DNA of 64,000 nucleotides from Orbicella franksi (Eukaryota): NCBI GenBank assembly GCA_964199315.1, contig OZ116705.1:28582001-28646000 (forward strand), given 5' to 3'. Each line of letters opens with the position of its first letter. Position 1 is the first letter of the stretch. Shown here one piece after another: positions 37,756 through 62,050 of the stretch. The notes under the pieces are model-generated. The model saw nothing but the letters and a program-made list of their open reading frames with translations, was not told the DNA's origin and did not search any database. A program made the position numbers and the translations under genes.

Positions 37756-37786
<31 letters not shown>

Positions 37787-40700: not shown

Positions 40701-40839
40701 CTCCAAGTTTCATTTCCAAGTTTACAACTTGTGTCATCTCTGCGATAGACGTGTAACTATCTCCTTTAGCGAAGAATTTTCGACGAAAACTTCGACAGAA
40801 AGCCAGGAAGAGAATTACACACAGCCATCGAGTGCCCAT
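30295..40839 (-). CDS. P4HA: Prolyl 4-hydroxylase alpha subunit, paralog 1 (13 exons, 529 aa)
   Basis: Exons 40839-40494, 38500-38360, 37522-37332, 36254-36203, 36100-35934, 35301-35131, 34264-34194, 33034-32935, 32678-32628, 31923-31861, 31494-31426, 31317-31221 and 30365-30295 are GT-AG, total 1590 nt and in frame. There is a hydrophobic N-terminus plus RLQDTY, LCRG, YRVSKSAWL, HxD (EFHLD), distal His (TEHAACPV) and 2-OG Lys (GNKWVANKW). Vertebrate subtype cannot be assigned. Confidence 0.95.
32142..32334. mobile_element. MITE copy 2 (see 7665-7825), inserted into another repeat
   Basis: AATAGGCCATATTCGTATTC / GGATACGAATATAGTCAATT ends interrupt a GCAGTTTTCAAT|TGAGTGTCG sequence related to the 61790-62050 repeat. 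Confidence 0.65.
33510..33826. mobile_element. Harbinger-like MITE family, copy 2 (opposite orientation to copies 1 and 3)
   Basis: Contains GATTAGTGTGGAC..GGTAGGCCTAACCGTAGAA, the reverse complement of the copy 1 and copy 3 core. Confidence 0.75.
33934..34131. mobile_element. TAGCCTGCG-ended MITE with a perfect 9-bp TSD
   Basis: TIR TAGCCTGCG / CGCAGGATA; ACTCTCTCA at 33925-33933 and 34132-34140. Confidence 0.8.
35025..35098. mobile_element. 74-bp micro-MITE
   Basis: TIR CAATCTTGTTCCCAGG / CCTGGGAACGAGGTTG; flanks TTACTTTCC / ATACTTTCC (8 of 9 TSD bases match). Confidence 0.7.
36447..36708 (+). mobile_element. tRNA-derived SINE with a V-domain-like central motif
   Basis: A-box TGGCGCAGTAGTGAG, B-box GTTCGATTCC, central TTTTCTCCGGGTTCTCCGGTT, and an (ATTT)n-like tail. 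Confidence 0.75.
36940..37272. mobile_element. Harbinger-like MITE family, copy 3
   Basis: Same core as 22114-22490; ends GTGGACGAGGCCCC followed by TAA. Confidence 0.75.
38889..39076. repeat. Palindrome with arms of about 85 bp in intron 1 of P4HA(-)
   Basis: AACAAATGGTAAACGCCATAGCGTGCACTATTGAGTTA..AGAGTCGCAC / GTGCGACTCT..TAACTCAATAGTACACGCTATGGCGTTTCCCATTTGTT. Confidence 0.85.
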
Positions 40840-41989: not shown

Positions 41990-43054
41990 CAAGGCTTCTT
42001 GCAGGAAGGTGGGGAAGGGGAAGGCTTGATGCTTAGTTCAGTACAGTCTGTATTTATTTATTAAAACCAAACTGGATACTGATAGCAGCTTCGAGGTTAT
42101 AGCAGTTTTACTGAGAATATTTACCCCGGGCGGTGGGAGGTCTGCAAATGTTTGTTGAGGCTGTGAAGCTGGGGCTGTGAAGCGACTTACCCTACATCAG
42201 ACCATGTTCAAATAAAAACACACACACAAAAAAAAACATAAAAACACGCACCAATGTAAAATCTTCCATTGTACCTAAAGAAGGCTGGTTTGGCCAGCCG
42301 AAATATAGTACACCTTCAAAAATCATTCTACGTTGTATCGGTTTTTGCTTTCAGTATTCTTCATGTTCAAATGCATTTTGTGTGAATTATTCCTTCCTAG
42401 TCTAGAGTAAATTTTTTTTGTGCCACTGAATCAGTTTCCCGGTATTGAGCTTATAACGTATTGTAGACCAAATCTCTCCCATGGCAGACCTCACAGCAAC
42501 ACATCCCAGTGTACCCCACTCCGAGGGTTCGAGGGAAAACTAGGTAGAGTGTTATATGACGTAGTAAGTGCAACGAGCTCCGCTCTCCACGAGTAATATG
42601 TGTCACTGCTTTGCTGAGACGCTTTCCAAAAAGTATTTGAAGTATTTTATTTCCACTACTTCAACGTGCAGTTTGCCATGTTTCCTTCCAGCTTCAATGA
42701 AATGAATAATTGATTGTTTTCATGAATGAATCGATTCATCCACTTTTTGGCAGGTTTTCCATTCCTGTGTCACGCTGGTTGTAAGAATTACTTCTGTGCC
42801 TTAGGACCAAGCGACATTTCCACGAGGGCTTTCGCTCTTCAAAACACCATTATTCTAGCTTAAGCACTAATTTGCAATTGTAATGAGTAGGAGACAACAA
42901 AATGGCGTTGGTCTAGACGTCATTATGAAAATTAGCAATGTTTGTTTGTTTTTTTATGAGATGAATATTCAAATTCTCAATAGTACATGTCTTCCTTGTC
43001 TAGGACCTCACAGAACTTCGTTCATTTTACTTGCGTGTGGCGCGGGTCTGCAAA

Positions 43055-46000
43055 ATGGCGGAGATGTTCTGCGCTAGATTTTCCCTATTAACACTGACTT
43101 TTTACCTGATTTTGAGTAGAACTCAAGGTGAAGTGTTCACGGCCTTAATCGATCTAGAGAACCTAGTGTACAGAGAACGTGAATTGAGGTTCACTTTAGA
43201 AGAGTATGTCAATTTAGAGGAACAGAGGCTGACCAAACTCAAGAAGTTTCTCGCTAAAGTGAACGCCGCGCATAAGGTTGTGGGAGAGGATGTATCAAGA
43301 TATTTAGGACATCCCGTAAACTCTTATCTCGAAATTAGGAGGATGTACAAGGAATGGCCCGAAGCAGAAAGACTAGTTCAGCTAGACAATTCTGAGGGTA
43401 AGTTTAGTTTTTCAGGGAGATTTTCATATAAGTTTGGTTGCATTTTATCGAGGTGATGAATTCAATAACAACTCGTTTTAATTTGTCTCGCCGATTAATT
43501 TCTCTCAGTTATAAAATTGGAGAGCAGCTACCCACGTAAGCTTGTTTGCCTTAAATTATATCGATATTGTTATGGAGATCTGATTTAATTTTATTTTAAT
43601 TCACGTTTGTGATGAGGACTTCAATTTAAGCTATTATATGCAATCAATTTTACACTCTCGAGAGTGCGTAATCTTACGACTAAAGACTAATACGAGAAAA
43701 TTTTTGAACACCATGCTTATTTATTCCCTTAGTATTAATTTTGGCTGACGTGTCAGTCACTGATTTAATCCAATTCTAATTGACATAGCTTGATGAGTTG
43801 TCATTATTGTCTTAATTTATGCATGAACATTTTTTAATGACGGTTTTCCCGTTAGAACTGCATCTTGGTAATATTCTTGAGATTAGGCTATTTTACTCAA
43901 TTTGAAACTGAAATATTATAGAATCTGTAGAATCTGGTACTTAAACAGAAAATTATTCAATCCCCTACGATGATACTCAGATACACAGGGGCCGGGCTCC
44001 AGGCAAATTGACCGGCTGTGAGAATGATTTTGCCTGCCTGATTTGACTATCTAAAGGAAACTTTTCTTACACAGACGTTCAGTTCAAAACGGTTTGCCTG
44101 CCTGTGAAAGGCAGTTGCCCTCTTGCTGAAAATGTTTATGAAACCCCTGATACACAGATCAAAACTAGCTAGAACTGACCAATCACTGTTGACAGACCAT
44201 TGACAGTCAGCGATCACATCAAAACTAACCAATCAGTTCCAACAGACAAGACTTATCATTGACTGACAAACTAAAGTCTTTGTTCACTTTATCCAGATAT
44301 GGTTTCTGCTCAGATTGGAGCAAATTTTGTGATCATCCAAAGTCATTTTCAGGATTACCTTCACATGGATGATTGTAATAAAATTTACATAAATTTGAAC
44401 TGCAACCTTCCTTAGCTTATGATTTATAGTTTATTTTTTCTCATAAGTAACGCATTAATACTTCACAATTTTATTGCGAGGAGAATTAAGTTCGCAGATC
44501 ATCATATCACATGCTTTTGTCTGGCAGCTGTGAGTGATGCTATTACCAAGCATAAAGAAGCATTTCCAGGAAAAGAAGACTTTGACGGAGCAATCACGGC
44601 ACTTCTGCGACTTCAGGACACATACCAACTTCAACCTTCGTCATTTGCTCTTGGAAAATTACCTGGGTCAGTGCAGTCACCTAAAATGACAGTGGGTGAA
44701 GTTTATGATGTGGGACGACATGCATATCTCAACAGTGACATGTTTTACACGAAGACCTGGATGGAGGAAGCTTTGAAACAGTACAACAAACAGAATGAGA
44801 CTGAAGATGTCCGTCTGTTTGATGTGTATGATCACTTGGCATTTTCTGAGTACAAAGTGAGGAACATTGAACTATACTTATTTATTTTGTAGCTGTAAAA
44901 TGTTTCCTTGTTTACCATAAACTTGTAAAAACAAACGTAAAGAGTTAGTGGAACTAGTATCTATGGTTGCTATCTATTCCTTATAATGTTTATATCTGGT
45001 TTTATGTCGACATCCCTCATGATCAAGAATCAAGCATTTAAATCTTAAACCTTAACCATCCTAAGAACTTTTTCATAGGATTTCTGCTGTGGCAATTAAG
45101 GGCAGCTATTTTCCTACATGTAAATGTCAGGTTTCAAAATTCTCCACATTTGTCTTTATATTAACATAATAGGTGTTAGACAGTGGCATGAAGATATGAA
45201 TTATATTTTCCAGTTGTAAAACACAATACTTTACGAACAGGTGCAGCAAGTGAGTAAAATATTGCTTTTAACATGAGAAAATATGTCTAATTCATATCTT
45301 CAAGCCACTGTAATTTTCTTTTTATTACATAGACAAAGTGACTGTTTGCACAAGCAAATTCATGAAAAAGTGGGAAGTGACATCATCAATATCCTTACTA
45401 GTGGGGACATATATAATATTCGGCACTTGGTTCCTGGATACATGTAGTTTAGTATGAATTTTATGAGTGTATTTTCTAGTAGACATGTCTCTATAATACT
45501 AAGATTATGGTACTTAAAAATGATCTCCAGTCCGTACTGTGCAGTCTCAGCACCCTAATGTTTATAAACATGAAAATTCTCACTCGATGGAATGCAAATT
45601 GAAGTTATTCGTTATGAGCCACATACCTTATCTTTGAGGCTTTTCAAATTCTTTTTCCAACTGCTTCATTGATTTTTACAGCTGTTAAGTTGTTTCGTCA
45701 AGTGATATCATGTAAGTAGTTGCAAAAAGTTCACATTTTGTGATGTCATACATGAAACAAAACAAAAAATGTAAACATACTCTTGCGAGTGTGCAGTACC
45801 AACTGGAAATCATCTTTAATAGTAGATAAAAATGAATAAATTAAGTAAGTAATAAATAAAGGTAGTTAATACCTCAAGTCAGTTAATCAGCTTCAGTTGA
45901 TTATCAAGTAACAACCTAAACAGAGATATACATCTGTGTTTTGCATGAGGCTAAGTGCGTACATGTACTATCTTAGCTGTGGCATGATCAAAAAATATAT

Positions 46001-49000
46001 CATTTCCTGACTGGTTCTTTTGTTTACATTGCAGCGGGGCAACTTTAGAAAAGCATTGGAGTACTCTAACAAGATGGTAGAAATTGGTAAGTAAAAAAAT
46101 TAAGGTTGTTTGTATATGTTCTGTTGGTCATTGACACATTATTTAAAACAATTTCAATGTAAAATGGACAATTCACGAATGGCATAAATTTTTTCACATC
46201 TGATACTTTTTTAGTAGTTTCTTGCATGACCTTGCACATCAGTGATACAAAATGAAACCGGCAAAGCCTGTTGAAAGCAAAGAACAGGAAAGAATAGAGT
46301 GCAGAACCCTTTTCTTGAATCCTATTCCAAGGCTTTTTGAGAAGTCTTTCATCAGCTGAAGAAATTTTTTTTTCCCTTTACTGATAATGCTTCATGTTTT
46401 ACTATACAGTTGAGCCCTGCAATCTTGATTAAGGGAAACAAAAAATAGTTCGAGATGTTGGGGGTTTGAGATAGTAAGTGACTAAAAGTACGTATAACCA
46501 AGGGAAAATGATTTCAGTTTGAGTAAGCGGGAGGTTCAACCAACTTAATTAGAGATTGCAAGTTTCTTTTAAGGTTTGTTCTGCAATAGAGTCATGGCAG
46601 ATTCTGTTACAAATAACCATTACCAAATTCCCTGAACATTGCAATTTGCTCACTCCCTCCAAAAAAACACTCAACAACTTCATCTTAGAGTACTAGGAAC
46701 ATTTAATTTTTGTGCAGGAGTGGAGATAAAGACTGCATACAAGCCAAGTGGCCCATCACGCCAGCTGTTATCCTAGTTTCTGTAGAATGAAGTGACTAGG
46801 ATTATTTCTATTCCTTCCTGGATGGGATGCTGGTCCATCGCAGTGTTACCCCTGGCAGCATTAAATTTGCTGGTACCCATTTATACACCTGGGTGGAAAG
46901 AGGCACTGTGAGAGTTAAGCGTCTTTCCCAAGAACACAACGCAATGTCGTCGGCCAGGGCTCAAACCCAGACTGCTTGCTCAGGAGTTGAGCACACTAAC
47001 CATGAGGCCAACGCGTCTCCTTCGAGAGTAGAGATATTCGGTCATAATTTAAATAAACAAAAATGCAGCCAAATCCCTTCTAAGGGGGTGAGTAGGGAGT
47101 CATGGTCAAATACAAGACTCAAAAGTGGCAGATTTACATTTCCCGTGCTGATTTCTAACTTAGATTTTCTATTTTGTAGATCCCACACATGAAAGAGCTC
47201 AAGGAAATGTTGAATACTTTGGGGAAGAAGTTAAGATGTACAAGCAGACTGGTCGCAGAGGTGATACTGGAATTATCACTGATACGAAAGTGAAACCAAG
47301 GAGTGAGCGAGCTGACTGGCATCAAACATCTTCCTTCCAAAACTACGAAAGGCTGTGCAGAGGGGAAGTCAGAAATTTGGTGAGTAGATTGCACAATTGG
47401 TACCCAAGTTTGAGTGTGAGCTGAGCTTAATTTCAATTCAGGTTGGTCCAAATCCTAGTTTCTTTTAATTTACGTTTCACAATATTAATTACCCCTTCAA
47501 CAAAAATGTCAGTTTCATAACCACTGTCTAACCTCTATTAAGCAGCGACCTATGAAGCAGCCACCCTTTATTAAGTGACCAGTTATTTAAGTCCCAAAAT
47601 GACTGTCAGTAAAATACTGTAAATAAAACCCCTATTAACCGGTCACCTCTATTAAGCGGCTGCAGCCACTTTTTGGTCATCCTGATGAAGGTTTTTCCAT
47701 TGTCTTTACCCCTATTAAACAGCCACCCAAAATTTGCTACAGGTAAATTAACTTTGTTTTGGAAAAGGCAATGGTAGAAAAGAGTCTGAAAGAGAAGGTG
47801 ATGAGTGATAAAAACATTCAAACACATGTTTATCATAATTGTCTTGAAGTGACTCCATGTTCACTAAGAAATTAACCGAAAATAGGCAAACCCCTATTAA
47901 GCAGCCAACCCCTATTAAGCGGCCACCTCCCATTTCCCCTAGGGTGGCCGCTTAGTAGGGATTCGACTGTATTTCCTCTTGTCCATGTGTCTGTTCAATC
48001 ACATGTCATATCATTTTGAAATTTTTTTACAGACTGCATGGGAACAGAGTAAAATGACGTGTTGGTACCACAGTGCTACACCAAGATTAAAAATCAGGCC
48101 TGCAAAATTTGAACGAGTGTTTGTCAAACCCGAGATACTTATTATGCGGAACATTTTATCAGAGTCAGAGATGAACAAAATAAAGGAACTGGCTGCGCCA
48201 AGGGTAATGTAACTCTTTCTTGTTCTCGTCTATAAAACTCCCATAACGTAAGGCCCTGTGCACACTACACGAGAGGAATTTGAAAATGGAGGTTTCGCTC
48301 TGGAAACCCAGCAGATGTTTTCGTCCACACTACACAAATGCAACAATAACCAGTCATTCTGGATTCGTGGTTGAGGAAAACTTGGGCAGGGAAATCACAT
48401 TTATTATCACGATGACATCATTTTTGAAAAGCTCTGTTTTCAAAATGTTTTCTGTCCATACGAGAATGAAAAATTGGCGTTTTTAAATTTCTCCGGTTTG
48501 AAGAGTGTTGTCAAAAAGGTCTGTTTTTGTGATGGATTAGTGTGGATGGTATAGGCCTAACTGTAGAAAGAAAGCTCCATTTTCAAATTTCTCTAGCATA
48601 GTGTGGACGGGGTCAAGCTCTGAAAATTATGCGTTTACTTTCCCCCTTTCATTATTTATACCTGAAAGTGGGTGTAGTTTCACCTGGATACATGTATATG
48701 TCTTTTTCCATTTTTACGTTTTTGTGAGATTTATTTTCATAAATTGTGGAATTTAAGTAAAATGTTATCGGCAAGCTGACATTTTTTTCTATCTGCTGTT
48801 GCTGCTGCTGCGTTATGAACCACAAGAATTGCTTCATTGCTTTGTCTGGTTTTCGACATTCAAGCTTGTTAAACCAGGGTTGCTGACAGCCTTAATTTCT
48901 TAATTAAGCTTTGCAGACCATACTCTCTGATTGAAAAATGAATTGGAAAAAATGCACTTCAACAATAAAGATCATGTACTCTGCACACTATTGTTTTGAA

Positions 49001-52000
49001 CCCAGCAAAAAGTCTACATATGAGCAAAGTGGCCCATCAGGCCAGAGCTTATCCCAATTTCTGTAGCGTGAAGTGAATCACTAGGAGTATTTCTACTCCC
49101 CCCTGGATGGGATGCTAGTCCATCACAGGGTTACCCCCTGCATTAGGTCTGCCAGTATCCATTTATACACATGGGTGGAGAGAGGCTCTGTGAGAGTAAA
49201 GTGTCTTGCCCAAGAACACAACAAAATGTCCCCAACAAATTGTGTATTTACATGTAAGCAAACCTCAAAACTGTAGTTTCCGATACATCAAACATACAAT
49301 GTTAGCCAGGTACAACATACATCTCAAGTCAAAAATGTTCCAAAACACAGCACATTTGGAGCTTTATAGCATCTCTGAGACTAGACAACCGGAAAATCTG
49401 CAGGAGTTGATGAATATGTTGTCGTCTTATTAATGTTTTGGCATATTATTTGGTAAATAAGTTGTTAAAAATTGAAGGCTTTCGTGCAAAAAGGGTGTAT
49501 ATAACTTTTTGGGCCAATTTTGCTAAATTATGCATCATTGGGCTAATTTGCTTCACTATTTGAAGATAAAAAAGGAGATAACATGTACTATAGTTGGCAA
49601 AATCGTGTTTTCTATGACCTGAAAAAAAGCTTAATTTTTTAGGAGATTGTTTGCCTCAGGAAATAGGAGAGAACAGCAACAGTACTATATAAATTATCAA
49701 TGAAAAGCCACTCAATTTGCCTAGTGCCTGGCCCTTAATGAAACTGCTGGTGGTTGTTCGAACTTGTATGGGCCATTTACCAAGACATCTTTAACAATTC
49801 ATTGCTAAAAGATTTGAATTGAGCTTTGCACATGACAGAGTTTTAATTAGCTTGCAAAAATAATTTTGGTGACTTCTGTCATGAACAAGAAGAATAATAC
49901 AACCATGTTCACATGTCAACATTTGGAGATTGAACCAATCAAATTCGTGTGTCTCCCACTAAGCATGCTGATTGGGTACTAATATGCGTTATTGACCTTC
50001 TTATAATCAGCTTCGTCGAGCCACAGTAAGAAGTCCAACAACAGGACTGTTAGAACATGCAAATTATAGAGTTAGTAAAAGGTAATGAGCCATTGCTTGT
50101 ATCAGTCACTGCAGTTAATCTTATGTTTCACGACTACACACAACGAGTCAACATTTGTTACTTTGTGATCATCAAGAAAATTAATAATATTAAGATATTA
50201 ATTGAAAATTAATGATTTATTAACATTCCTATTAGAAATTGTGAAAATATATGAAACATTATCCAAGGCAGATGTGGCTCAAAATTCTGCTTCATATGTG
50301 GCTGACTTTGCTTTTCACATAATTTGTGTTATTATGTAATATTGAGTAATATTTATGCAACATTGCATAATTATGCAACTTTGTGTAATTATGCAACATT
50401 GTGAAATTATGCAACAAAGCCCAATGGCTATTTAAGCTATCACACCAAGCTGATCTTTTGTGACTTCAGGACTGTCATTTAACTGTCAATCAAATGGTTT
50501 TATGTATTCAGCAAGCCTGATGTGAGACTATTTGATTTTGTAGAAATCAACTCTTTACATGTGCAACTCTCTGACAGAGTCAAATAAATATGATTCTAAC
50601 TTTTATGTCTGTGAATCAAACTTCAACCCAGGGTACAAGTGTTCAAATGAAACCTCATGAGGAATGCTTTTTGTGCTACTAATTGTGATGCTGTACAAGG
50701 TGGTTCTAGCTTCTAAGTCTGTGGATGAAACCCTAATGTGTGACCATTCAAATGAAAGCTATTGAGCGGAAACATGTTTTACAGGTTTAACAGACATCAA
50801 ATTATGTAAATATTATAGCATTTTGTAAAGCTTAGCTCTAGTTTTTGTCACAATAAATACTCCTCTTTTTCTATATTGAGCAGTACTTTCATGTGGTACT
50901 GTTTATTATGCTGCACAAGGTGGTTCTAACTTTTAAAGCGTGTGGATGAAACCCTAATGTGTGACCATTCAAATGAATGCTATTGAGCAGTACTTTCATG
51001 TAGTAATAACTGAGTGTTTATTATGCTGTACAAGGTGGCTCTAACTTTGAGGTCTGTCGATGAAACCCTAGTGTGTGACCATTCAAATGAAAGCTACTGA
51101 GTAGTACTTTCATGTTGTGCTATTTATTATGCTGTGCATGGTGGTTTCTTTTATTGTTTTCATTAATGCAAAGGCTAACTAAAGCTCTTAACTTGGTAAC
51201 CTTTCCCTTCAGGTTCATGTGACAATTAACGCATAATAGTAACAGCTTGGTTTTCTTTGCATGTTGTTGTCTAATTATATAGCTTGCACGTGCTACAGTA
51301 ACTCTTGATGATGGAACTTTAGAGACAAGTGAACATAGAGTTAGCAAAAGGTTTGTGAACACAGAGTCGTGTCAAAATTAGGTTTAAACATAAAAAGCCA
51401 GCCCACCGTGACATAGTCTATGCAGCCGTTATTTGAGTTGTCACGCAACACTCCACCACTGACACAGCTGTTAGTGGGAAAGGAACGTTGTGTGACAACC
51501 ATGACAAGCACCATTACAAGTAAAAAAAAAATTTTTTTTCCATAAAAGACCAAAAATAGTTCGCTTTCCTGGAGATATCGCTTAAGGCTCGTGTGGATTT
51601 AACTGTCTTTCTTTAAAAATTGTCCACTATTTTCATATAAAAGAAGTCAGGCCACCTTAAGAAGAATGGCATTAGGGAAGATAAAAGACCAAAGATAGTT
51701 CACTTTCTTTGAAATATCCTGTGAGGCTTATGTGGATTTAACTGGCTTTCTTGCAGGCAGAAATGGCCGTATGTTATGTTCATTCACAAAACGAAAACAA
51801 AAAATAATATACATATTTGAAAACATTAACAACCTCAAATAGAATTGCTCATACCATGATGCTAGAACCAATGAAATCTCTTGAATAATGTTTATCATAC
51901 ATTTTGCCTATTATTTTTGTTCTCACTGGCTCACAGTGTATAGCTTGTTCATGATGACATCGAACTGTGATGCAATATCTGTGGACATTAACATTTAAAA

Positions 52001-55000
52001 CATGATGGCACAGGCGTCACCCCGACTTAAACCTTAATTAGATGCTGTGCGACTATTTCTCGAGAGCTAGTCCTGTTGAATAATGGCAAACATAACAGAG
52101 AAAAAACGTGATGACATGAAAATTGCGATACAAAAACGACTAATAATTTTCCAGGTCACCATGAAGAAAGCATGATTTTCAAAAATGAGCCGCAACATAT
52201 TCATGCAGTTTTAGTATAATTAAGACGCACAGGGTGTTGGGAGGAAGCTTACAATCTAGACTCTGTGTACCAGAAATTTTGAGCGTGAGATACGGAATGG
52301 CATGGGTACAGTGGGAGGTGCAGTATGTTGGAAGGTACTGGGATGTGAGATTAACAACAGCATATCATTTGCTTCCAGTCATTGCACACAGTCCTTAAGA
52401 CGGATTTTATTATTTTTTTTTTTATAACCACTATGTTATTTTACTTGATCATTGCCGTAATTCAAGCCAAACAACCAATAACCTTTACGTCGAAAAGGTA
52501 ATCAAATAAGTTCTGATAAGAGAACATTGAATTATTGTTACTGCCCTTCAATTTCTCCCAAGGTACTTCCTAAAAGTATTTGTTGACTTAGTGGTACATC
52601 TCTTTTTTTCTGTACCCTTTCTGCATCTTTAACAACCAGGCTTATTTCCTTAGGTCTGTGACAAACTTATCTTTCTGATACAATATCCTTCCCCCCCCCC
52701 CCCCCACAACCTCCTAACCCAACCCCGAACAACAGAAAAATGTTACAGCGCTTCTTTCGCTTTGCGAGGTCAAACCTATTTTATTAACTAATTAGATCAT
52801 AAGTTCGAGGTTTCTAAGCCTTTCACGTGATAATTTTTGATTACTTCTCTACGTTGTAAGTAGAACAACATGCGTTACAGAAAGATCTCACACGGTAACT
52901 TGCAATTGTGCATGTACGCAGATCGGTTTTGTCAGCAATTTCGAGTTTTAATGTCACTTAATGGTAGCCGTTCGTCTTTTCCTCTTCTAAGGATTTTTAT
53001 TATTGAGTAGTATTTCTTAATCTTCCTCCAAAACTTCAGAAAAACGAGAAAATATCAACAATTTGTAGACAAGATCTCAAGAGTCACTGGTTGCGCATTT
53101 ATGGCTTATAGTGAACGATTGCTCCACCAATCAGGCTGCAGCATTTGGTAAAATGGTAGAATTGTACTAATTAGTGTTATTCACAAACGTTTCCAAACAG
53201 CTTCGTCGTGCGACAATCCAACATCCTGTCACGGGGAATCTCGAACATGCGTCCTACCGTATAAGCAAAAGGTTGGTTACTGCTGTTTTTATCAGGTTCA
53301 TTCATATTTGGTGATTGCTTGGAGCAGAGATTCTAGGGATGGTTTTTTACAGGCTAGAATGTGAAGGCTGTTTTCATCCTACGGTCCCGATTGCCTCAGT
53401 CGTTTAGAAAACCTGCGGGGATAATTTTTTTTTAAACCAGTGACTATTGGTAATCCAAAGAAATAACCATAATTTTTTTTGACTTTGTAAACTAAATCTG
53501 GTAACAACAACAACGACTTTATTTTCTGAATTCAGATAATGCCAGGTAATGTCTAACTGTAAACAAGGTTCTAATAATTCTCAACTGACGGACTGTCTGA
53601 TTGACGGACGGACACACGAACTGAATGACTGACTGACTGACTGACAGACTGACAGACGGACGGACGGACAGACGGACTGACTGGCTGACTGACTGACTGA
53701 CCGGGACCTTACTGACTGACTGAATGACTGGCTGACTGACTGACAGACAAGTGATGAAAGAAACTAGCCAACGAACCAACTGTTGATCGACTGACTGACT
53801 GACTGACTGATGGACGGACGGACGGACTGACGACTCACTGACTGACCTACAGACAGACAGACTAGCAGCGTAAGAAACTAGCCAACAAACCAACTGTCAA
53901 TCGATCGAGGGAAAGAATCAACTAACCAACCAAAGAACTGCGCTATCCATCTACGTAATTATTAATGATTTAAACTATCGATCAAATATGAATGAGCCTA
54001 TGTTGATAACAGCTGTAACATCTTCATATGCTCGGTTTGTAATGGCTGACAATATAGAAAGACAGTTGAATCCACACTAATTGACTTGATTTTACGTTGC
54101 TCTGATATTTGATATAACGCGTTATACTGTAGACCTAACTGAATAATTATGTTTAAAGCGATTCTATATGATTTTCCAGACTTAGCGCTAAATTCTCAGA
54201 GATAATGAAGCGAAATATATTACAGCCAATCTTGAACTAATAAAATATAAACTTACATGATAAACATTATCATAACGTATTGTAGATTTGAAGATTCTTC
54301 ATTTAAACATAGGATCATGAAGACTGAATATAAGGCTAAAATAAGACATTCTATTTTTTTATTTCAAAAAAAAAATTGCACTTCATATATTTAAGTAACG
54401 GTGATTGTGGCAAAGATGAGAACATCAGGGTCTTCAAAACGTTATCTGGGCCGTGACACAATGTTCCTCAAGCGTGACAATCGTGACAGCCGCGTCGTTA
54501 TGTTACGCTCGAGAAGCGTGACGCCATAAATAACAGTAGTGACGAGCGTCTGATAGAAACATCTTCAATTTAATATCGAAAATGTCCATCGAGATAAAAC
54601 CATTCCTTTTAATTAATGAGAAAGGGAATTAATACATTTTAACTTGATCAACAATAATCAACAGATGATAATTGTAAACTTTGAAAGTTAAAATAGCGTT
54701 TGAATTGACACTTAAATGACAGTGCTGTAAAGTGTTCTGCAGCTTATTGATTGGTTTTCCATCCGGGAAATTAGTACTGATTTTATTACGGACCCGTATG
54801 TGAGAATTTCTTGAACCCGCAATTATTTGAATTCTCGGTTGTTTTCTTTTGTTAATTTATTTCATTTATTACGTTGTTTACTGTCTGTTGTGTACTTTTC
54901 TGAATTTTTATATTTTGTTTGTTTGTTTGGCTTTTTTGTTTTGTTTATTTTGTTTATTTGTTTACTTGTTTACTTCCTGTAAGTGGCTGGCTGAAGGACG

Positions 55001-58000
55001 AGGACCACGAACTCATCAGACGAGTGAGTCTGCGCATTGAAGATGTAACAGGCTTGACTATGGACACTGCTGAGGAACTACAGGTGTGTACTGTCAAGGG
55101 AGGGGTAGGAAAAATATTACCACTGCTGAAAAAGGGCGATCAATTTGATTGCTAATTGGTCTCTATTTGATCGTTACAATTTATGATTGGAAACTTCTAA
55201 TCCTCCAAACTGCTCAGTAATGTTCAAAACATTTTAGAACTTAGGAAACTGAATGGTTAATTGAGTAATTTCAAGGATGTTTGAATGGGTAGGAGGGAGG
55301 GGGGCTGAGTAGAGAGGGTACCTTTAATAGGCCATTTCCTCGTTGCTTTTTGCCTCTCTTTCAAAACGAGTCCTCTTGCAAAACCTTTCTTATCAAATGA
55401 GTTTGATTGGCATGAAAATGAACTTATAGATGAAACCCTTTTTCAAAACAATGGTTTCGCACAACAATGGTTTTAACACAGAGGCAAACGGCAACTCGGA
55501 AATGGCCTATTTCGCAAAACACCAGCCATGTCTGGCTGTTTACTGGGTCATGCCAAGAGAGGCTGAAGGGTAACAGAGTGAATCCCCCGTTAAAGGCCTT
55601 ATTCCCAAGGGAACCCCTGTCAAGTTATTTTTAGATCACTAACCTGTTTCGGAAATCCCGAGGGGGTCTAGAAACAGCCAATCATGTGACGAATTTTGCT
55701 CACGTGAACAGTCATCTCAGTCGGCTTTTCGCGCTTTTCATCCTCCGCGCAACGCGTGCGATAATATTATCCGCGGAGGAACTGGGTACCATGTCTAAAA
55801 ATAACTTGAGAGGGAATGATTATTGATTCTCTTTACTCTTCATAATCTCTGGCTCATTCACATAATTTAATATTCCAGTTTCGTCTTTGCTTACATATGT
55901 GTTTTAATTTTTTTTCTTGTAGATTGTGAACTATGGAATTGCTGGTCATTACGAACCACACTATGACTTTGCCCGAGTAAGAAAAATATTAAAGGCTTCC
56001 GTGAACAATTTGCATGAGGATAACGTGTGTACTCGTGTGCCCTCTGCAGCTTGTTAATTGTACAGTATGTTAACTCTGGTGCTGGGGTAGTCGTTACAGT
56101 AGGGCCCGGTTCGTACGTCGCATTTCGACGTCTGAATCGGCAGCTGCATTTCCGCCGCACGTTCGATTGGTCTTTTCGCATTATCCGACAGAAATGCGAC
56201 ACCGATTCAAACGTCGAATTTCTGCCGTGTTGAACCTAATACATACATCATGATGATGTATTGAGCATGCGTAAATTTGGTCTGGCCATAGAAAGAGAAA
56301 CAACGTGGCCTTTCTCGTCCCCAGTCCTACCTGGCAGAAAGGCTCATTGGCTCGATAATCATGTTGCTGATATGCTAGGTGCGATCTGCTCAGACGACTA
56401 CTTTGCAAGGACAAGTTGCAGTTTTAACCGGAGTTCTAACCTGAACATATCGCTACACATACTGCTGTATTGTCAGCCTTCTCCTTCTCGTTTGATTGAC
56501 AATTTTCCGCAACAACCCTTCGTCGTTTAGTATCTTCGTCCGCCTTATTGGATACTCTACGTTTAAGACATTTTCCGATGACTGACATACGCGACACTGC
56601 AAAAATGTTGTGTATATAACTGCGATGATCAATCATGTCTTCATACGCGACAGTATTAATTTTGAATTAACTGCGACACAAGCGCGACGTATGAACCGAG
56701 CCTTAGCTACTCCCCTAGACCAGTGGCACCACTCGGCCACAATGTCTTCCATAACTATTTGTGTGCCTGTGTTTTTCTGTTATAGGGCAATGAAGATAGG
56801 TTCACGTCACTAGGTACCGGCAATAGGATTGCTACGTTTTTGGCTTACGTAAGTCAGTGCAAAATTCCCTTTTTTAAATTAAAATATGAAACAGATTAAG
56901 TAAAATTTGAATTGGATATAGAAGTGAAATCAATCCTTATGCAGTCGTAGAAGCTGTTTATACATTCTAGAATGATCTACACTTAAAAAGGTAAAAACTG
57001 TGCATTAAGAAGAACTTATAACGGCCAAACAAATATTTTACTTCAATATAATCAATTAAGGGTCTCGACAGACTTTAGACTTAAGCTTTAGATAATAGTT
57101 CCTGTCGATAACTATTAGTGCTTGATAGAGGTTTTCTATACAGTAGAGGCAATACTATGTGTGGGAACCGAGAAAAAGAGTATCTCTGCATATGTCAGAG
57201 TTTATGGCTTGACATTGCTGGAAGCAAACTTTAGTGAAGGTTTGGCTGTCGAAAGGTGTGTCACGGAATAAGAAAACCTTTTTCGTGAGAATTGTTCGTT
57301 ATGACAACTTGAACTAAGGGACCGTTCATTTTTTATCAGGTAGGGGGGCTGGTGGGATTTGGGGGGGGGGGGGCCATGCGAAAAAAAATGGCTTTCGAGG
57401 GGGGGCCATCCCAAAAAAATAAGGGAAAAAGGGGGGGTCACGTGAAATATTTTAGTAAAACGTTAAAATGGCATAATGTTTGAATATCAAAAACATTGCT
57501 ATAGAATAAACATAGAAGGCAGGATACAAATTTATTACAAACTTTCCTTCTGCTTTAAAAAAACGTTTGGCAACAAAAAGCATTTGTAGCTACTGAAAAG
57601 AAGTATTTAACACTGTTATTTTCGAATGCAACTTTCACTGGCACTCATCTTCATCTTCGCTGTCGTCGAGTTCTTCGTCGCCGTTTGTGCTGCTATGGGA
57701 GTCTCTTTCACCAATGCTGCAAGAAGCAGCAATGCTTTCCGTCAGGGTGTACTCTTCAGGGTACATGAAGGTGTAAACATAATCTCTGACTTCCCGCTCA
57801 AGGTTGGTGGTGATTCTGCTTCTTGCAGCATTGGTGAAATAATTCCCTTCCAAGAGCTGTGCGATGTATGGCCCATCTCTTCTAAATAACGACGTGGCAA
57901 CATCCTCAACTTTAGTACACTCTTCCGGGACGGCCGTTCTAGGAGGGTACACAAGGCATTGTGGAAGATCATTTCCTAGCGGGTTTCCAACACAGATTCC

Positions 58001-60912
58001 ATAAACTCGTTGGACGTTGTTTTCAGTCCGCTTCCTCTTTCTTTCATTTGACTTTCTGCGGTTTTCTTTTTTCCTTCTCCTTTTGTTGATGTGCTGTTTG
58101 AGTATGCCCTTAAATATGCTGTTATAATTGCTCTTATTTTCTAGTTCTTCTGTCCTGCGTGACCTTCGTCAACTTAGCTTCTATACATTTGATCTGTTTT
58201 ACATTAAAACTGTGGGCATTCATCAATTCAGATGAGGGAGATGCCAATGAGAGGCCAAATGCCACACACTCAGGGCGAGCCATAACTAGGAGATCCGAAA
58301 TTGAGTTCTCTTTCTTTTGATTTGTTTTTCAAACAACAGCTCTCTGTAGTATAGGGATTGTAAATATTGTCTTCACAGTGAGCACAGAACGTGAAGTAGG
58401 GGGAAATATTAGAGAAATATTAAAAAAGTTGAAATCTAAATATTGTTTGTTCAATTTTTTTTTTTTGGGGGGGGGGTCATCCCAAAAAATGACCGCTATA
58501 AGGGGGGGGCATGTGAAAAAATTGGTAAGCTGAGGGGGGGTCATGCGATTTTTAAATGGTGCTTCCCAAATCCCACCAGCCCCCCCCTCCCTCATAAAAA
58601 ATGAACGGTCCCTAAAAGAAGTTGTTGAGAACTATTATTTTGCAATCATTTGTGGTAGAGTATTGAAACATAGTTTGTCCAGCATATAACAACTTTCAGT
58701 TAGAGGAGTTACGTCACGGTTTGCACATCTTGAAAAGTTTAGCCTAAATTTTTCAAAGTTCGTCGTTTGTAATCCGTGTTAATCTTCTCCATCCTTAACC
58801 ATCCTTGTTCTTTTATGTTTTATTGTTATCTCTTTGGTGTTTTCTATCTTAGTAAACTACTATTTTCAGGTTTCCTTGAATTTAAAAGTAGTTTTGTTCG
58901 TGGTCAAAATAACTCAAAATACCGTGACTGAGCTCTTTCAAGTGTCCTTGGTCCCGATTGTTCAGTGATTTTAACTCATTGTTCTCGTGTTTTCAGATGA
59001 GTGATGTCGAAGCAGGCGGTGGCACAGTGTTCACTCAAGTTGGCACAACTTTATTTCCTAGCAAGGTAATAGAGAAATTTGTTTAGATTGTCACGCAGTG
59101 CTCCCCATTGCCTGACGAAGTCGCGTTAAGCCTACAATAAATCACATTAGCTTTTAAGAAGAAGCTACTTTTTCATCTTTATCAATAAGACCATAAATAA
59201 AAGCCTTTCAAAAACTATGTTTAGGGCAACTGTGTCAGTCGCAATAGTCATAAATAAGCTATCGAATGGTTGGTCTGGTCATAAATAGGGTAGGGAAAAT
59301 CGCAGATTTTGGTCATAAATGGGGTAAGGGTTTTGGAAAGCGGGCCGCACACCCCCACCCAATTTTTCTGGGAGTACCCCCCACCCCCACCCGGGATCCC
59401 GACGGAGTCCAGGGCAGTCGGAGTCCCCCACGATGGTATTGTGTTCGTTTCAAGTTTGGAACTTCTGGCGACACTGAATCAGTACCGAATCGTACTGAAA
59501 TCACAACTGGTTTCCACCCACGATTTGAAGTTGTAATCCTAGCGCGAAATAATTCTCAGTGAAAATCCCGACAAACATTTCATTACGCCTGTAGAAATGT
59601 GACTGAAAGAGCTTCGATCGACCTTGAAACCTGCTTTAGATAGTCTCCATCCTCTAGTTCTTCTATAAATTCATCGAGAGCACTAGCAAAATGTTAACCA
59701 GTAGAGATTGGACAGGCGCGAACTCCGGGAATGGGTGTTGGGGCGCGCCCGTCTGCGCTTTGCCATTATAACTGTAAAATAAACGGTGAACGGACTAGCT
59801 TTAAATGGCGCCAGAAGTTTAAAAATACTAGCATCATAAACTTCTGATACCGCTGATATTTTGCTTTTAACCATGAAACAACAGGGAGACGCTGCGTTCT
59901 GGTGGAACCTGAAGCGCAGTGGAGACGGTGATGATAGCACAAGACATGCTGGCTGCCCAGTATTGGTCGGCAGTAAATGGGGTAAGATAAGTAAATATGT
60001 ATTTATTTGTGATATTAACCTCTTACTAACTGAACGCCAGGGCCGCACGGGAATATTGGCCCGAGCTCGTTGCAGTACCAACCGAGCGCAGCGAGGTCCG
60101 TACAAAAACATCCGAGGGCATATATTTACCCGTGCGGCTCGAGCAAGCTAGTTTAGTAAGCAGGTTGTTATATGGCAGTCGGCCCTTGAATTTTCCGCTT
60201 TTCAAAAAGTGAGAAATACACGGCCTATTCCCTTCGTATATCAAAATCTGACCAAAAAGAACCAATCAGAACCCTCGGATTTAACTCAAGACTACCTTGC
60301 CACATAATAAATGGCGTTACTGACCAGGCGCGACGCCAAGAAATAAAACTATTCACCGTGTCCTACTTTGTTCGTGTGAACCGAGACGAAATCGCGGACG
60401 AAAACAATAAACAACGCAATATTTACAACGTTTGAATCGAACAGTCATGACAAATGAGGGTTTCTTTTCTTACTCAGAAAAGGTTATTGAAATAGTCTTC
60501 AAGCGAGTTTTCCGGTCAAGTACAAACGAAGCCAGACGCTCTCTAGAACTGATCAATCGCTGTTAACACCCGTGTTACAGCCAATACTATCACGGCTAAA
60601 CTGACCGATCAGTTTCAACGCACCAGAATTATAACACCATGGACTGACAAACACTATTCAATCCAAAAATGACTGCCGCTAGGATTCCTGAAACGTAAAT
60701 CAAAATAAAAGTCATCTTCAGAAGAACTATAAACTTTGTAAAACGTCAAGTCCTTAGAGGGTCTTGTATCTGATGAAAGCAAAACCTCAGAAGGATTTGT
60801 TTTTTTTTTATTTTGTAATATCGTATGTTCATGTTTTTCAGTGGCCAACAAGTGGATTCATGAACGCGGCCAGGAATTCAGAAGACGCTGTGGTCTTTCT
60901 CGACACGAGTAA
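43055..60912 (+). CDS. P4HA: Prolyl 4-hydroxylase alpha subunit, paralog 2 (12 exons, 538-539 aa; exon 6 present as three alternatives)
   Basis: Exons are 43055-43397, 44528-44856, 46035-46086, 47180-47379, 48033-48203, [50011-50081 or 51283-51350 or 53201-53271], 54984-55083, 55923-55976, 56786-56848, 58997-59065, 59885-59981 and 60842-60912, all GT-AG and in frame. Motifs: signal peptide, GEVFTAL, RLQDTY, LCRGE, SKSGWL, VNYGIAGHYEPHYDFAR, GNRIAT, TRHAGCPVLVGSKWVANKWIHERGQEFRRRC. Confidence 0.96.
46734..47020 (-). mobile_element. tRNA-headed CORE-type SINE
   Basis: On the minus strand: TGGCCTCATGGTTAGTG (A-box), GGGTTTGAGCCC (B-box), then GTGTTCTTGGGAAAGACGCTTAACTCTCACAGTGCCTCTTTCCACCCAGGTGTATAAATGGGTA (CORE-like). 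Confidence 0.75.
47521..47970. mobile_element. Tc1/pogo-like non-autonomous element
   Basis: Internal repeats of CC(C/T)CTATTAAGC(G/A)GCCA; the right end is GGGATTCGACTG followed by TA. Confidence 0.6.
48249..48617. mobile_element. Harbinger-like MITE family, copy 4
   Basis: TAAGGCCCTGTGCACACTA ... TAGTGTGGACGGGGTCAA; core shared with copies 1-3. Confidence 0.7.
49014..49234 (-). mobile_element. 5'-truncated CORE-type SINE (same family as 46734-47020)
   Basis: CAAAGTGGCCCATCA..GGATGGGATGCTAGTCCATC..CCATTTATACAC..GTCTTGCCCAAGAACACAAC is collinear with 46734-46950. Confidence 0.75.
50011..50081 (+). CDS. P4HA(+) alternative exon 6A (71 nt; LRRATVRSPTTGLLEHANYRVSK-S)
   Basis: ATAATCAG| acceptor, TACTAAT branch-like motif at 49977-49983, AAAAG|GTAATG donor; phase 0 to 2. 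Confidence 0.9.
50594..51148. repeat. Tandem repeat, unit of about 105 bp, about 4.5 copies with an interruption
   Basis: Repeated GTGGTTCTAACTTT..GTGGATGAAACCCTAATGTGTGACCATTCAAATGAAAGCTATTGAGCAGTACTTTCATGT..TTATTATGCTGTACAAG. Confidence 0.85.
51283..51350 (+). CDS. P4HA(+) alternative exon 6B (68 nt; LARATVTLDDGTLETSEHRVSK-S)
   Basis: TATATAG| acceptor, AAAAG|GTTTGT donor; phase 0 to 2, no stop codon, one codon shorter than 6A and 6C. Confidence 0.8.
53201..53271 (+). CDS. P4HA(+) alternative exon 6C (71 nt; LRRATIQHPVTGNLEHASYRISK-S)
   Basis: CCAAACAG| acceptor, TACTAAT at 53165-53171, AAAAG|GTTGGT donor; phase 0 to 2. Confidence 0.9.
53580..53870. repeat. Compound tetranucleotide microsatellite (GACT/GACG/GACA)n
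   Basis: Long runs of GACT, GACG and GACA units. Confidence 0.9.
55326..55511. mobile_element. MITE with a 14-bp perfect TIR
   Basis: AATAGGCCATTTCC / GGAAATGGCCTATT. Confidence 0.75.
56102..56703. mobile_element. PIF/Harbinger-like MITE
   Basis: Ends GGGCCCGGTTCGTACGTCGC / GCGACGTATGAACCGAGCCT in a TWA/TAG-like context. Confidence 0.65.
57318..58612. mobile_element. PIF/Harbinger-like non-autonomous element (1295 bp) with an internal open frame
   Basis: TIR of about 47 bp (GGGACCGTTCATTTTTTAT..GGGGGGCTGGTGGGATTTGGG) at both ends, perfect TAA TSD (57315-57317 and 58613-58615), and a stop-free frame at 58168-57635 on the minus strand. Confidence 0.85.
58703..58935. mobile_element. Non-autonomous DNA transposon, copy 2 (see 6797-7030)
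   Basis: Collinear high identity with 6797-7030. Confidence 0.7.
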
Positions 60913-61789
60913 TACTGCTGACTGGAACAGCGGGCTCAAAATAACTTTTTTAAAATACCAAGATAACTAAATGGCGGTCGGTTTTATAAATACCTATATT
61001 TCTACGATATTTCTACTGATATAATATTTCGGAGGCGTTTTTCGCGCCTTGAGTAGATTTTGTCTGTCACTAAAAATGGCCAACGTGTGATATCGCTTAT
61101 TAGCCTCCAGCACAGTTGTAAACCACTTTCTGAAGCAAGTCGAGTTATTTCGCTTATCCTTTAAGCTTCTTAGAAATTCAGTTTTCAACCATTTTGGTTA
61201 CACGAACGATTTAATATCTTTTTTTCGAGGGGGGGGGGGGATGTTATAAAGCGCGCCGCATTTTGCCACATGACAGGAATTAAAGTTTTCGATAATTTCG
61301 ATTTTAATTGGCCAAGAACTAAAAAAGCCGACATAAAGATCTAACAACAAGAAATTCAAACCTGTCTTGAGTGGCATTCGCCAGTCAGGCATTGACCAAT
61401 CACGTTTAAGACCAACAGAAATGGTGAGTTGACAGCGCGCGACATTTCCCGCGCCTGCCCCATGTCCTATCCAGAACCCACATCTCCCAGTTCGTCATCA
61501 GATCTGGGCACGAAATAGGCCCTGGCGTGATTGGTTTTTTTAATCATTCGACTTCTGCTTGGTTGATCGCGGTCTCTGTAGTGACTGACTCTGTGATTAC
61601 TTGGTTCTAGTTTTTCCGCAGTTTCGAGTCACCTCTTGCCCCTAAAAACTGAAAATGAGTACAGGAAAAAACGTGCTGTTTTCGTAATAAGGTAGAAAAT
61701 ATCTTTGCGTTGTCAAAGCCAGGCAACTCTACTAGTGTGTTAGAAATTGTACCGATCTTTGTTAGTAACCTTAGGGCGCTTTTCCTTTG

Positions 61790-62050
61790 ACTGTCGAAAG
61801 TTATTGTTATTTGCTTTGGTTTTGCATTACAACGCTTTGTGATTGGTTTAAAAATATCGCGCTACTTTCTCGTCCAATCGGAAGTAAAACCAAAATCGCG
61901 ATTTGCCCATAACGTTTTCCCGCGCTTTTTATCAGCGGCTTGTATTTAGTTCGAGTTCTGATTGGTTCGCTTGATTGTCTGTGTGCTTTGTGATTGGCCA
62001 GAGTGATCACTGGGTTTGGGTTTTAAACACTCAATTCAAAACCGCTCTAG
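61790..62050. repeat. Interspersed repeat related to about 32130-32510
   Basis: Ends in ACACTCAATTCAAAACCGCTCTA, the reverse complement of which matches GCAGTTTTCAAT..TGAGTGTCG at 32134-32344; repeated GATTGG motifs. Confidence 0.5.

What the first reader, a model, noticed from the sequence alone, without database searches (positions are those of the whole stretch)
50011..53271. Three-way mutually exclusive exon cassette in the catalytic domain of a prolyl 4-hydroxylase alpha gene
Seen: between constitutive exons 48033-48203 (..ELAAPR) and 54984-55083 (S-GWLKDED..) are three homologous, stop-free exons with canonical AG/GT borders and the same phase 0 to 2. They are 6A LRRATVRSPTTGLLEHANYRVSK (71 nt), 6B LARATVTLDDGTLETSEHRVSK (68 nt) and 6C LRRATIQHPVTGNLEHASYRISK (71 nt). 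Only a length of 2 mod 3 keeps the frame. Any two give 139 or 142 nt, all three give 210 nt and none gives 0, so exactly one can be used. The spacers (1201 and 1850 nt) are too long for steric exclusion, and all three donors are weak (GTAATG, GTTTGT, GTTGGT). Established: this segment corresponds to the flexible loop ending in the YR(I/V)S / RTS arginine that covers the peptide-binding groove in P4H catalytic domains (beta3-beta4 loop of Chlamydomonas P4H-1). Inference: one gene makes three isoenzymes with swappable substrate-binding loops, possibly tuned to different collagens or matrix proteins. The ORF track misses all three exons.
Basis: partly seen in the sequence, partly recalled or inferred. 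Interest (0 to 1): 0.92.

Follow-up and report, generated by a model that had tools for sequence, protein, structure and literature searches.

The report
Three alternative substrate-loop exons in coral P4HA
A coral collagen prolyl 4-hydroxylase gene carries three tandem, interchangeable versions of the small exon that encodes its substrate-binding hairpin loop; this is a three-exon form of the two-exon swap long known in human P4HA1, and it is already annotated in related corals, a sea anemone and a sponge.

Summary
Exons 6A (50011-50081, 71 nt), 6B (51283-51350, 68 nt) and 6C (53201-53271, 71 nt) are homologous, stop-free and AG/GT-bordered. They lie between exon 5 and exon 7 of a 12-exon collagen P4H alpha gene (43055-60912, + strand). 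Only single inclusion gives a full ORF (539/538/539 aa). Skipping or multiple inclusion gives a premature stop 326-503 nt before the last exon junction.

- **Conservation:** all three types are conserved across distant scleractinians. RefSeq lists the A and B types as isoforms X2 and X3 in Oculina patagonica.
- **Relatives:** genomic loci fetched here show a 68/71/68/71 cluster in Nematostella and a 71/71/68 cluster in the sponge Amphimedon. Fish p4ha1b isoforms swap the same segment.
- **Function:** the segment is the substrate-binding 'hairpin loop'.
- **RNA evidence here:** junction reads support only 5->6C (50 reads plus a contig). 6A has some coverage but no listed junction. 6B has almost none.

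No docking/selector RNA pairing was found. This is a real feature and a new member of a known kind. This scan's note s1-207859, on this same stretch, already pointed to the P4HA1 exon 9/10 position.

The parts
43055..60912 (+). Collagen prolyl 4-hydroxylase alpha gene, ATG to stop; 12 exon positions, 14 exons counting the three alternatives
   Evidence: Pfam P4Ha_N and TPR_P4H; spliced mRNA L002 aligned to the window; gene model with AG/GT at every border and a 539-aa ORF 97.4% identical to P0155
48033..48203 (+). Constitutive exon 5 (171 nt, ends in phase 0 with ...ELAAPR), donor AGG|GTAATG
   Evidence: junction reads leave it at 48203
50011..50081 (+). Alternative exon 6A (71 nt), A-type hairpin loop (RATVRSP..YRVSK)
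   Evidence: Orthologous A-type isoforms in Oculina, Montipora, Acropora and Porites. Porites-like mRNA contig L001 aligns here and not to 6C. dN/dS about 0.15 against L001. RNA depth about 3 per strand in the bin in X24, but no junction listed
51283..51350 (+). Alternative exon 6B (68 nt), B-type loop, one residue shorter and acidic (TLDDGTLETSEH)
   Evidence: 21/22 identical to Oculina patagonica RefSeq isoform X3 and 20/22 to the Acropora cervicornis model KAK2557062. Essentially no RNA depth in the four runs laid
53201..53271 (+). Alternative exon 6C (71 nt), C-type loop, the default and most conservative form (RATIQHPVTG..YRISK)
   Evidence: Junction 48203->53201 seen in 1 + 12 + 37 reads of three raw-read runs and in a contig of a fourth run. 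Every Logan transcript product examined from the window's closest relatives (P0154, P0155, P0159-P0161, P0163 and its cluster) carries this type
54984..55083 (+). Constitutive exon 7 (100 nt; its first base completes the split Ser codon, then GWLKDED...)
49976..49996 (+). Branch-point-like block GTACTAAT..GTTATT.AC, about 30 nt upstream of the 6A acceptor
   Evidence: shared with the 6C upstream block at the same distance from the acceptor; local alignment p about 0.014 against shuffles, uncorrected for six comparisons
53164..53184 (+). The matching branch-point-like block upstream of 6C

Best explanation
Exons 6A, 6B and 6C are an old tandem triplication of the exon that encodes the substrate-binding hairpin loop of the catalytic domain of collagen prolyl 4-hydroxylase alpha. 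Each mature mRNA carries exactly one of them, giving three isoenzymes of 539, 538 and 539 aa that differ only in 22-23 residues of that loop. 6C is the default form and the most conservative in sequence. 6A is a minor form. 6B is a rare or condition-specific form with a loop one residue shorter and acidic. Shown: mutual exclusivity is enforced at least at the level of the reading frame. All three lengths are 2 mod 3, so skipping or including two or three exons puts a stop codon 326-503 nt upstream of the last exon junction. Inferred from the general rule: such transcripts would be removed by nonsense-mediated decay. Not established: what picks the exon. The weak acceptor and donor of the dominant 6C suggest dependence on trans-acting splicing factors rather than on competing RNA structures.
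For: Anatomy and frame. Gene identity. Use of 6C: 50 junction reads in three runs plus a contig. Hint of 6A use: depth about 3.1 per strand in the 6A bin in X24 and about 0.4/2.2 in X23, in a bin where the repeat-rich contig run X3 has zero depth. Conservation of all three types across the deep scleractinian split: A 21/23, B 20/22 and C 20/23 between the window and Acropora, against 81% for the whole protein. RefSeq isoforms carry the A type in seven coral species and the B type in Oculina patagonica. An intronless 2083-nt mRNA contig carries the A type. 6A dN/dS is about 0.15 (pN 0.14, pS 0.56), similar to constitutive exon 5. The same architecture is read directly from genomic loci: Nematostella 68/71/68/71 nt with the C-type exon last, as in the coral, and Amphimedon 71/71/68 nt. 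Fish p4ha1b isoforms swap exactly the same segment. [quoted passage not shown]
Against: In this species no 5->6A or 5->6B junction appeared in the joints table. That table is truncated: 39 joints were not shown, and the listed ones total about 18 or more in reads plus contig depth, so a junction with fewer reads could be hidden. The 6B bin had essentially no reads in four runs. Every Logan transcript product I examined from the window's closest relatives (P0154, P0155, P0159-P0161, P0163 and its cluster) is C-type. The RefSeq X2/X3 isoforms are pipeline models whose transcript support I could not inspect. The A. cervicornis B-type protein is a gene prediction. I never saw a B-type mRNA directly: searches for spliced B-type fragments found none. 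RNA runs that hold 6B words also hold intron sequence, so they prove nothing.
Confidence: 0.8

Rival explanations
1. Only 6C and 6A are really used. 6B is a conserved sequence that is spliced in so rarely, or not at all, that it makes no functional isoenzyme in this coral.
For: No RNA depth over 6B in four runs. No spliced B-type fragment found in protein searches. The 6B donor GTTTGT is the poorest of the gene.
Against: 20-21 of 22 residues, the 68-nt length, the open frame and the AG/GT borders are kept between the window, Oculina and Acropora. That is better than the protein average and is not expected of unused intron sequence over that distance. RefSeq models a B-type isoform in Oculina. 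68-nt short-loop exons also sit in the Nematostella and Amphimedon clusters.
Confidence: 0.12
2. 6A and 6B are decaying pseudo-exons left by old duplications, and the gene makes a single enzyme with the 6C loop.
For: Only 5->6C junctions were listed. Every transcript-derived protein examined from the window's closest relatives is C-type.
Against: 6A dN/dS is about 0.15. An A-type mRNA contig exists. Both exon types are conserved across scleractinians with intact frame and borders. Nucleotide identity between the copies is only 59-65%, so they are old, yet both are still open.
Confidence: 0.03
3. Exon choice and exclusivity are set by competing RNA structures, a docking site pairing with one selector per exon as in arthropod Dscam1 or 14-3-3 xi, rather than only by the reading frame plus splicing factors.
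For: Clusters of three or more exons in arthropods usually work this way (my knowledge of that literature, not tested here). A 21-nt block is shared upstream of 6A and 6C.
Against: A scan of 24-nt windows after exon 5 and before exon 7 against 350-nt zones beside each variant gave best three-way duplex energies (-17.6 and -16.7 kcal/mol) inside the range of shuffled controls. The shared block reads as a branch site (TACTAAT) at a normal distance from the acceptor, and 6B lacks it. The test has low power without orthologous intron sequence.
Confidence: 0.1

Closest known systems
Human and vertebrate P4HA1 mutually exclusive exons 9a/9b (also numbered 9/10)
   Same: Same gene family and same exon. 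Fish p4ha1b isoforms differ in exactly the segment between ...PR and S-A-W-L, 23 residues. It encodes the hairpin substrate-binding loop (PMC9676403), and either exon is included but not both (PMC11868403).
   Different: Two exons there, three here. One coral exon is 68 nt and gives a loop one residue shorter. Common origin is not resolved: a tree of the 23 columns is unresolved except for the B clade. The literature traces the event only to Bilateria (PMC8373072).
RefSeq isoform sets of Oculina patagonica (X2, X3), Nematostella vectensis (X1-X4) and Amphimedon queenslandica (X1-X3) P4HA
   Same: Oculina X2 and X3 carry the orthologues of 6A and 6B (20/23 and 21/22 identical). The Nematostella genome has a 68/71/68/71-nt cluster with the C-type exon last. 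The Amphimedon genome has a 71/71/68-nt cluster.
   Different: Nematostella has a fourth exon, with no remnant in the window. The sponge introns are 74-247 nt, against 1.2-1.9 kb here. These are database models, and I found no paper describing them.
P4HA2 alternative exons 12a/12b
   Same: Homologous alternative exons in a collagen P4H alpha catalytic domain that change a substrate-binding loop (PMC9676403).
   Different: They change the betaII-betaIII loop, not the hairpin loop, so this is a different exon.
Multi-exon mutually exclusive clusters with docking/selector RNA pairing (Dscam1, 14-3-3 xi, MRP1)
   Same: More than two tandem homologous exons, with one chosen per mRNA.
   Different: No docking/selector complementarity above chance was found here. 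The reading frame alone already penalises every wrong combination.

Membership tests
Collagen prolyl 4-hydroxylase alpha subunit (C-P4H alpha) | N-terminal P4Ha_N dimerisation region | tested here: met
   PF08336 at E 7.7e-19 on exon 1 and 2.8e-11 on exon 2
Collagen prolyl 4-hydroxylase alpha subunit (C-P4H alpha) | TPR-like peptide-substrate-binding domain | tested here: met
   PF23558 TPR_P4H at E 5e-9 on exon 2
Collagen prolyl 4-hydroxylase alpha subunit (C-P4H alpha) | C-terminal 2OG/Fe(II) dioxygenase domain with the His-x-Asp...His metal triad and the 2OG-binding Lys | tested here: met
   The orthologue P0155 (97.4% identical to the window model) matches human alpha(II) CAT domain 7ZSC at E 5.3e-86. 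The window exons read ...GHYEPHYDF......STRHAGCPV... and ...ANKWIHERGQEF
Tandem homologous mutually exclusive exon cluster | Adjacent exons homologous in sequence, with the same phase and compatible lengths | tested here: met
Tandem homologous mutually exclusive exon cluster | Exactly one exon of the cluster in each mature mRNA, with each exon used in some mRNAs | tested here: inconclusive
   In this species only 5->6C junctions were listed. 6A use is suggested by read depth. Single-exon isoforms of all three types exist as RefSeq models in Oculina, and an A-type mRNA contig exists in a Porites-like coral
Tandem homologous mutually exclusive exon cluster | Wrong combinations are non-productive | tested here: met
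   Skipping, or including two or three exons, gives stops 326-503 nt upstream of the last junction. Decay of such mRNAs was not tested
Vertebrate P4HA1 exon 9a/9b event | Same exon position and boundaries in the protein | tested here: met
   Fish p4ha1b isoform pairs differ only between ...PR and S-A-W-L, the same 23-residue segment
Vertebrate P4HA1 exon 9a/9b event | Descent from one ancestral duplication (orthology of the exon copies) | tested here: inconclusive
   The tree of the 23 columns is unresolved. Pairwise identities give no one-to-one pairing beyond the C type. Annotated isoforms of Xenia, Hydra and Ptychodera do not differ in this segment
Docking/selector RNA-competition clusters | One intronic docking site complementary to a selector beside each variant exon | tested here: not met
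   Best three-way duplex energies lie within the shuffled range. Power is low without orthologous introns

The most novel reading that the evidence does not exclude
[quoted passage not shown] That would make this cluster older than the 'Bilateria-age' tandem-exon substitutions catalogued so far, and one of the oldest alternative-splicing events known. The acidic short loop would give the enzyme a distinct X-Pro-Gly preference.
Probability: 0.2. Interest if true: 0.65.

Novelty: new member of a known kind. Interest (0 to 1): 0.4.

Why it matters
Collagen P4H is essential for stable collagen in all animals. The hairpin loop is one of the two loops that enclose the substrate peptide. Nature has repeatedly, or very anciently, made this one exon swappable: two versions in vertebrate P4HA1, three in stony corals and a sponge, four in Nematostella. 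For enzymologists these are ready-made loop-swap variants on which to test what sets X-Pro-Gly preference. For splicing evolution the event reaches outside Bilateria, beyond the oldest dating I found in the literature (PMC8373072). For coral biology the isoforms could mark different matrix or skeletal-organic-matrix programmes, but none of that has been tested.

Tried and rejected
No 6x->7 junctions were obtained, and no further read laying was possible.
2. A run search with the 6B exon alone listed RNA runs that hold its words. Runs of the same studies also hold intron sequence, so this is not evidence of splicing.
3. Searches for spliced B-type protein fragments or B-type cluster representatives found only single-exon genomic ORFs or C-type proteins.
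4. The look-up of encoding contigs had no record for the RefSeq coral proteins or for Nematostella X1. An ENA coral contig of 100,969 nt holding exons 5 and 7 could not be delivered as DNA. No orthologous coral intron sequence was therefore available, and dN/dS for 6B could not be computed.
5. The docking/selector scan gave nothing above shuffled controls.
6. A tree of the exon peptides was unresolved except for the B clade.
7. Rfam found no family in 42000-62000.
8. I rejected the idea that 6A and 6B are recent copies or gene-conversion products. Exon copies are only 59-65% identical in nucleotides, and synonymous sites between 6A and 6C are saturated.
Full report
**The observation**

The sequence at the stated coordinates is as described.
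- 6A is 50011-50081 (71 nt), 6B is 51283-51350 (68 nt) and 6C is 53201-53271 (71 nt).
- Each follows an AG and precedes a GT. Each is open in the frame set by exon 5 and ends with the two bases AG, which the first base of exon 7 completes to a Ser codon.
- Exon 5 (48033-48203) and exon 7 (54984-55083) are as stated.
- A tblastn of the three peptides against the whole window finds these three copies and one more on the other strand at 34264-34194. That fourth copy is the single homologous exon of a second, head-to-head P4HA gene. There is no fourth copy in the introns of the + strand gene.

**The gene**

Exons 1 and 2 hit Pfam P4Ha_N and TPR_P4H. A profile-free search with exon 2 returned a full-length coral P4HA. 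Its relatives are annotated 'prolyl 4-hydroxylase subunit alpha-1-like' in Montipora, Acropora, Porites, Oculina and Nematostella.

A 1732-nt spliced mRNA contig from a close relative (L002) aligns to the window at 92-98% in twelve blocks. After refinement to AG/GT borders, the model runs from the ATG at 43055 to the stop at 60912. With 6C it encodes 539 aa, 97.4% identical to P0155, 89-90% to Oculina and 81% to Acropora millepora. The catalytic half of P0155 matches human alpha(II) (7ZSC) at E 5e-86 and Chlamydomonas P4H-1 (2JIG, 3GZE) at E 7e-27.

**Frame logic**

I built all eight combinations.
- C, A or B alone gives 539, 539 or 538 aa.
- Skipping gives a stop at codon 384.
- AB and ABC stop at codon 395, BC at 409 and AC at 410.
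- These stops lie 326-503 nt upstream of the last exon junction. By the usual rule (established knowledge, not tested here) such mRNAs are substrates of nonsense-mediated decay.

The spacers of 1201 and 1850 nt do exclude steric hindrance.

On splice sites, 6A's donor GTAATG equals that of constitutive exon 5. 6B (GTTTGT) and 6C (GTTGGT) carry T at +3, unlike any constitutive donor in the gene. The pyrimidine tract of the dominant 6C is poor.

**RNA evidence in this coral group**

Runs were found with the 7.1-kb interval. I laid three raw-read poly(A) runs (organism B) and one contig run (organism A) on 47900-53400.
- **6C:** the joint 48203->53201 is supported by 1, 12 and 37 reads and by a contig of depth 319.
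- **6A and 6B junctions:** none was listed. However, 39 joints were not shown, and the listed ones all total about 18 or more in reads plus contig depth. A junction with fewer reads could be hidden.
- **6A depth:** the bin holding 6A has depth 3.2/3.1 in X24 and 0.4/2.2 in X23, against about 4.4/4.1 in each of the two 6C bins in X24. The contig run X3, which is very deep wherever intronic repeats lie, has zero depth there. I read this as a hint that 6A is used at a fraction of 6C. It is not proof.
- **6B depth:** the bin holding 6B has at most about one read.

The direct test could not be finished.

**Comparative evidence**

Extracting the segment from the homologues shows three conserved exon types in stony corals.
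- **C type** (RATIQHPVTG..YRISK): found in the X1 isoforms and in every Logan transcript product examined from the window's closest relatives. It is identical between Acropora and Nematostella X1.
- **A type** (RATVRSP.TG.LEHA.YRVSK): found in isoform X2 of Montipora capricornis and M. foliosa, Acropora millepora, A. palmata and A. muricata, and Oculina patagonica, and in Porites proteins.
- **B type** (ARATVT.DDG.LETSE.RVSK, 22 aa): found in Oculina patagonica isoform X3 (XP_078383612.1, 21/22 to the window) and in an Acropora cervicornis gene model (20/22).

All three types are more conserved between the window and Acropora (87-91%) than the protein as a whole (81%).

An intronless 2083-nt contig with a complete 528-aa ORF of the A type (L001) aligns to 6A rather than 6C. 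Against it, 6A has pN 0.14 and pS 0.56, so dN/dS is about 0.15. That is similar to exon 5. The copies within the window are only 59-65% identical in nucleotides, so they are old.

**Beyond corals**

Two genomic loci could be fetched.
- **Nematostella** (L007): the four RefSeq isoform segments lie in tandem between the same flanking exons, as exons of 68, 71, 68 and 71 nt with AG/GT borders. The C-type exon is last, as in the coral. The coral order 71-68-71 matches the last three. No remnant of a fourth exon is in the window.
- **The sponge Amphimedon** (L006): three exons of 71, 71 and 68 nt sit in tandem, separated by introns of about 200 nt.

Fish p4ha1b isoforms swap exactly the same segment. 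Annotated isoforms of Xenia, Hydra and Ptychodera do not differ there.

A tree of the 23 columns resolves only the coral B clade. Pairwise identities pair only the C type across phyla. One ancient cluster and repeated duplication of the same exon therefore both remain open.

**What the segment does**

The segment aligns to LARATVRDPKTGVLTVASYRVSK of human alpha(II) and to the stretch ending in RTS of Chlamydomonas P4H-1. PMC9676403 calls this the hairpin loop (Cr-P4H Ser77-Thr94; alpha(II) Arg363-Val376, disordered without substrate). It is one of the two loops that enclose the substrate peptide. The paper notes that the C-P4H-I splice variants change this loop. A differing substrate preference among the three coral loops is an inference. 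The B loop is one residue shorter, strongly acidic, and has His in place of the Tyr before the Arg.

**How the exon is chosen**

I looked for docking/selector pairing and found nothing above shuffled controls. A 21-nt block containing TACTAAT lies about 30 nt upstream of both 6A and 6C (p about 0.014, uncorrected) but not of 6B. It reads as a conserved branch site. I therefore commit to the frame as the safeguard and to trans-acting factors acting on weak sites as the selector. The second part is inference.

**What is known**

- The P4HA1 pair of homologous exons was described in 1994 (Helaakoski et al., cited in PMC9676403).
- It is regulated in hypoxia (PMC11868403).
- It is one of eleven events found by all surveys of tandem-exon substitutions, and it has been traced to Bilateria through C. 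remanei (PMC8373072).
- I found no paper on the cnidarian or sponge clusters, but RefSeq already models them.
- This scan's own note s1-207859, on the same stretch, pointed to the same position. I confirmed the position and could not settle 'ancient or convergent'.

**Verdict**

This is a real, conserved three-exon cluster and a new member of a known kind. Its use in this species is proven only for 6C.

Noticed in passing
window 30310-40824, minus strand (homologous exon at 34264-34194): A second collagen P4H alpha gene lies head to head with the first, with start codons about 2.2 kb apart. It is about 40-47% identical to the coral P4HA1-like proteins. It has only one copy of the 71-nt hairpin-loop exon (RATVFNKKTG..YRVSK), with the same borders and phase.
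   Followed up: partly
window 46728-46948 and 49009-49230: Two copies (81-86% identical) of an interspersed repeat lie in introns 3 and 5. RNA reads pile up on it at up to about 270-fold per strand in X23, against about 8-17-fold on the gene's exon 5. They carry loose ends with tRNA-like GGTTCGAACCC-type sequence, so it is probably a tRNA-derived SINE expressed from many loci.
   Followed up: no
window 50683-51146: Nested direct repeats of about 114 and 221 nt lie in the 6A-6B intron and are heavily covered by RNA reads from elsewhere. In run X21 the cover is strongly one-stranded. 282 reads end at 50869 in a poly(A)-like tail, and 1542 reads continue upstream of 50799 into unrelated sequence. 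A related element probably forms the 3' end of an abundant transcript at another locus.
   Followed up: no
window 53576-53845: A (GACT/GACG)n-type microsatellite array lies in the 6C-exon 7 intron.
   Followed up: no
L007 9259-9305 (Nematostella): A partial second copy of the 3' two-thirds of exon X2, with its donor, lies 25 nt after that exon in the old Nematostella assembly. It is either a local duplication or an assembly artefact. The old gene model EDO36261 and a zebrafish X2 model join two of the alternative exons in frame; these are probably annotation artefacts.
   Followed up: no
window 54902-54965: A T-rich low-complexity stretch just upstream of exon 7 tripped the read-laying filter, which says nothing about its biology.
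   Followed up: no
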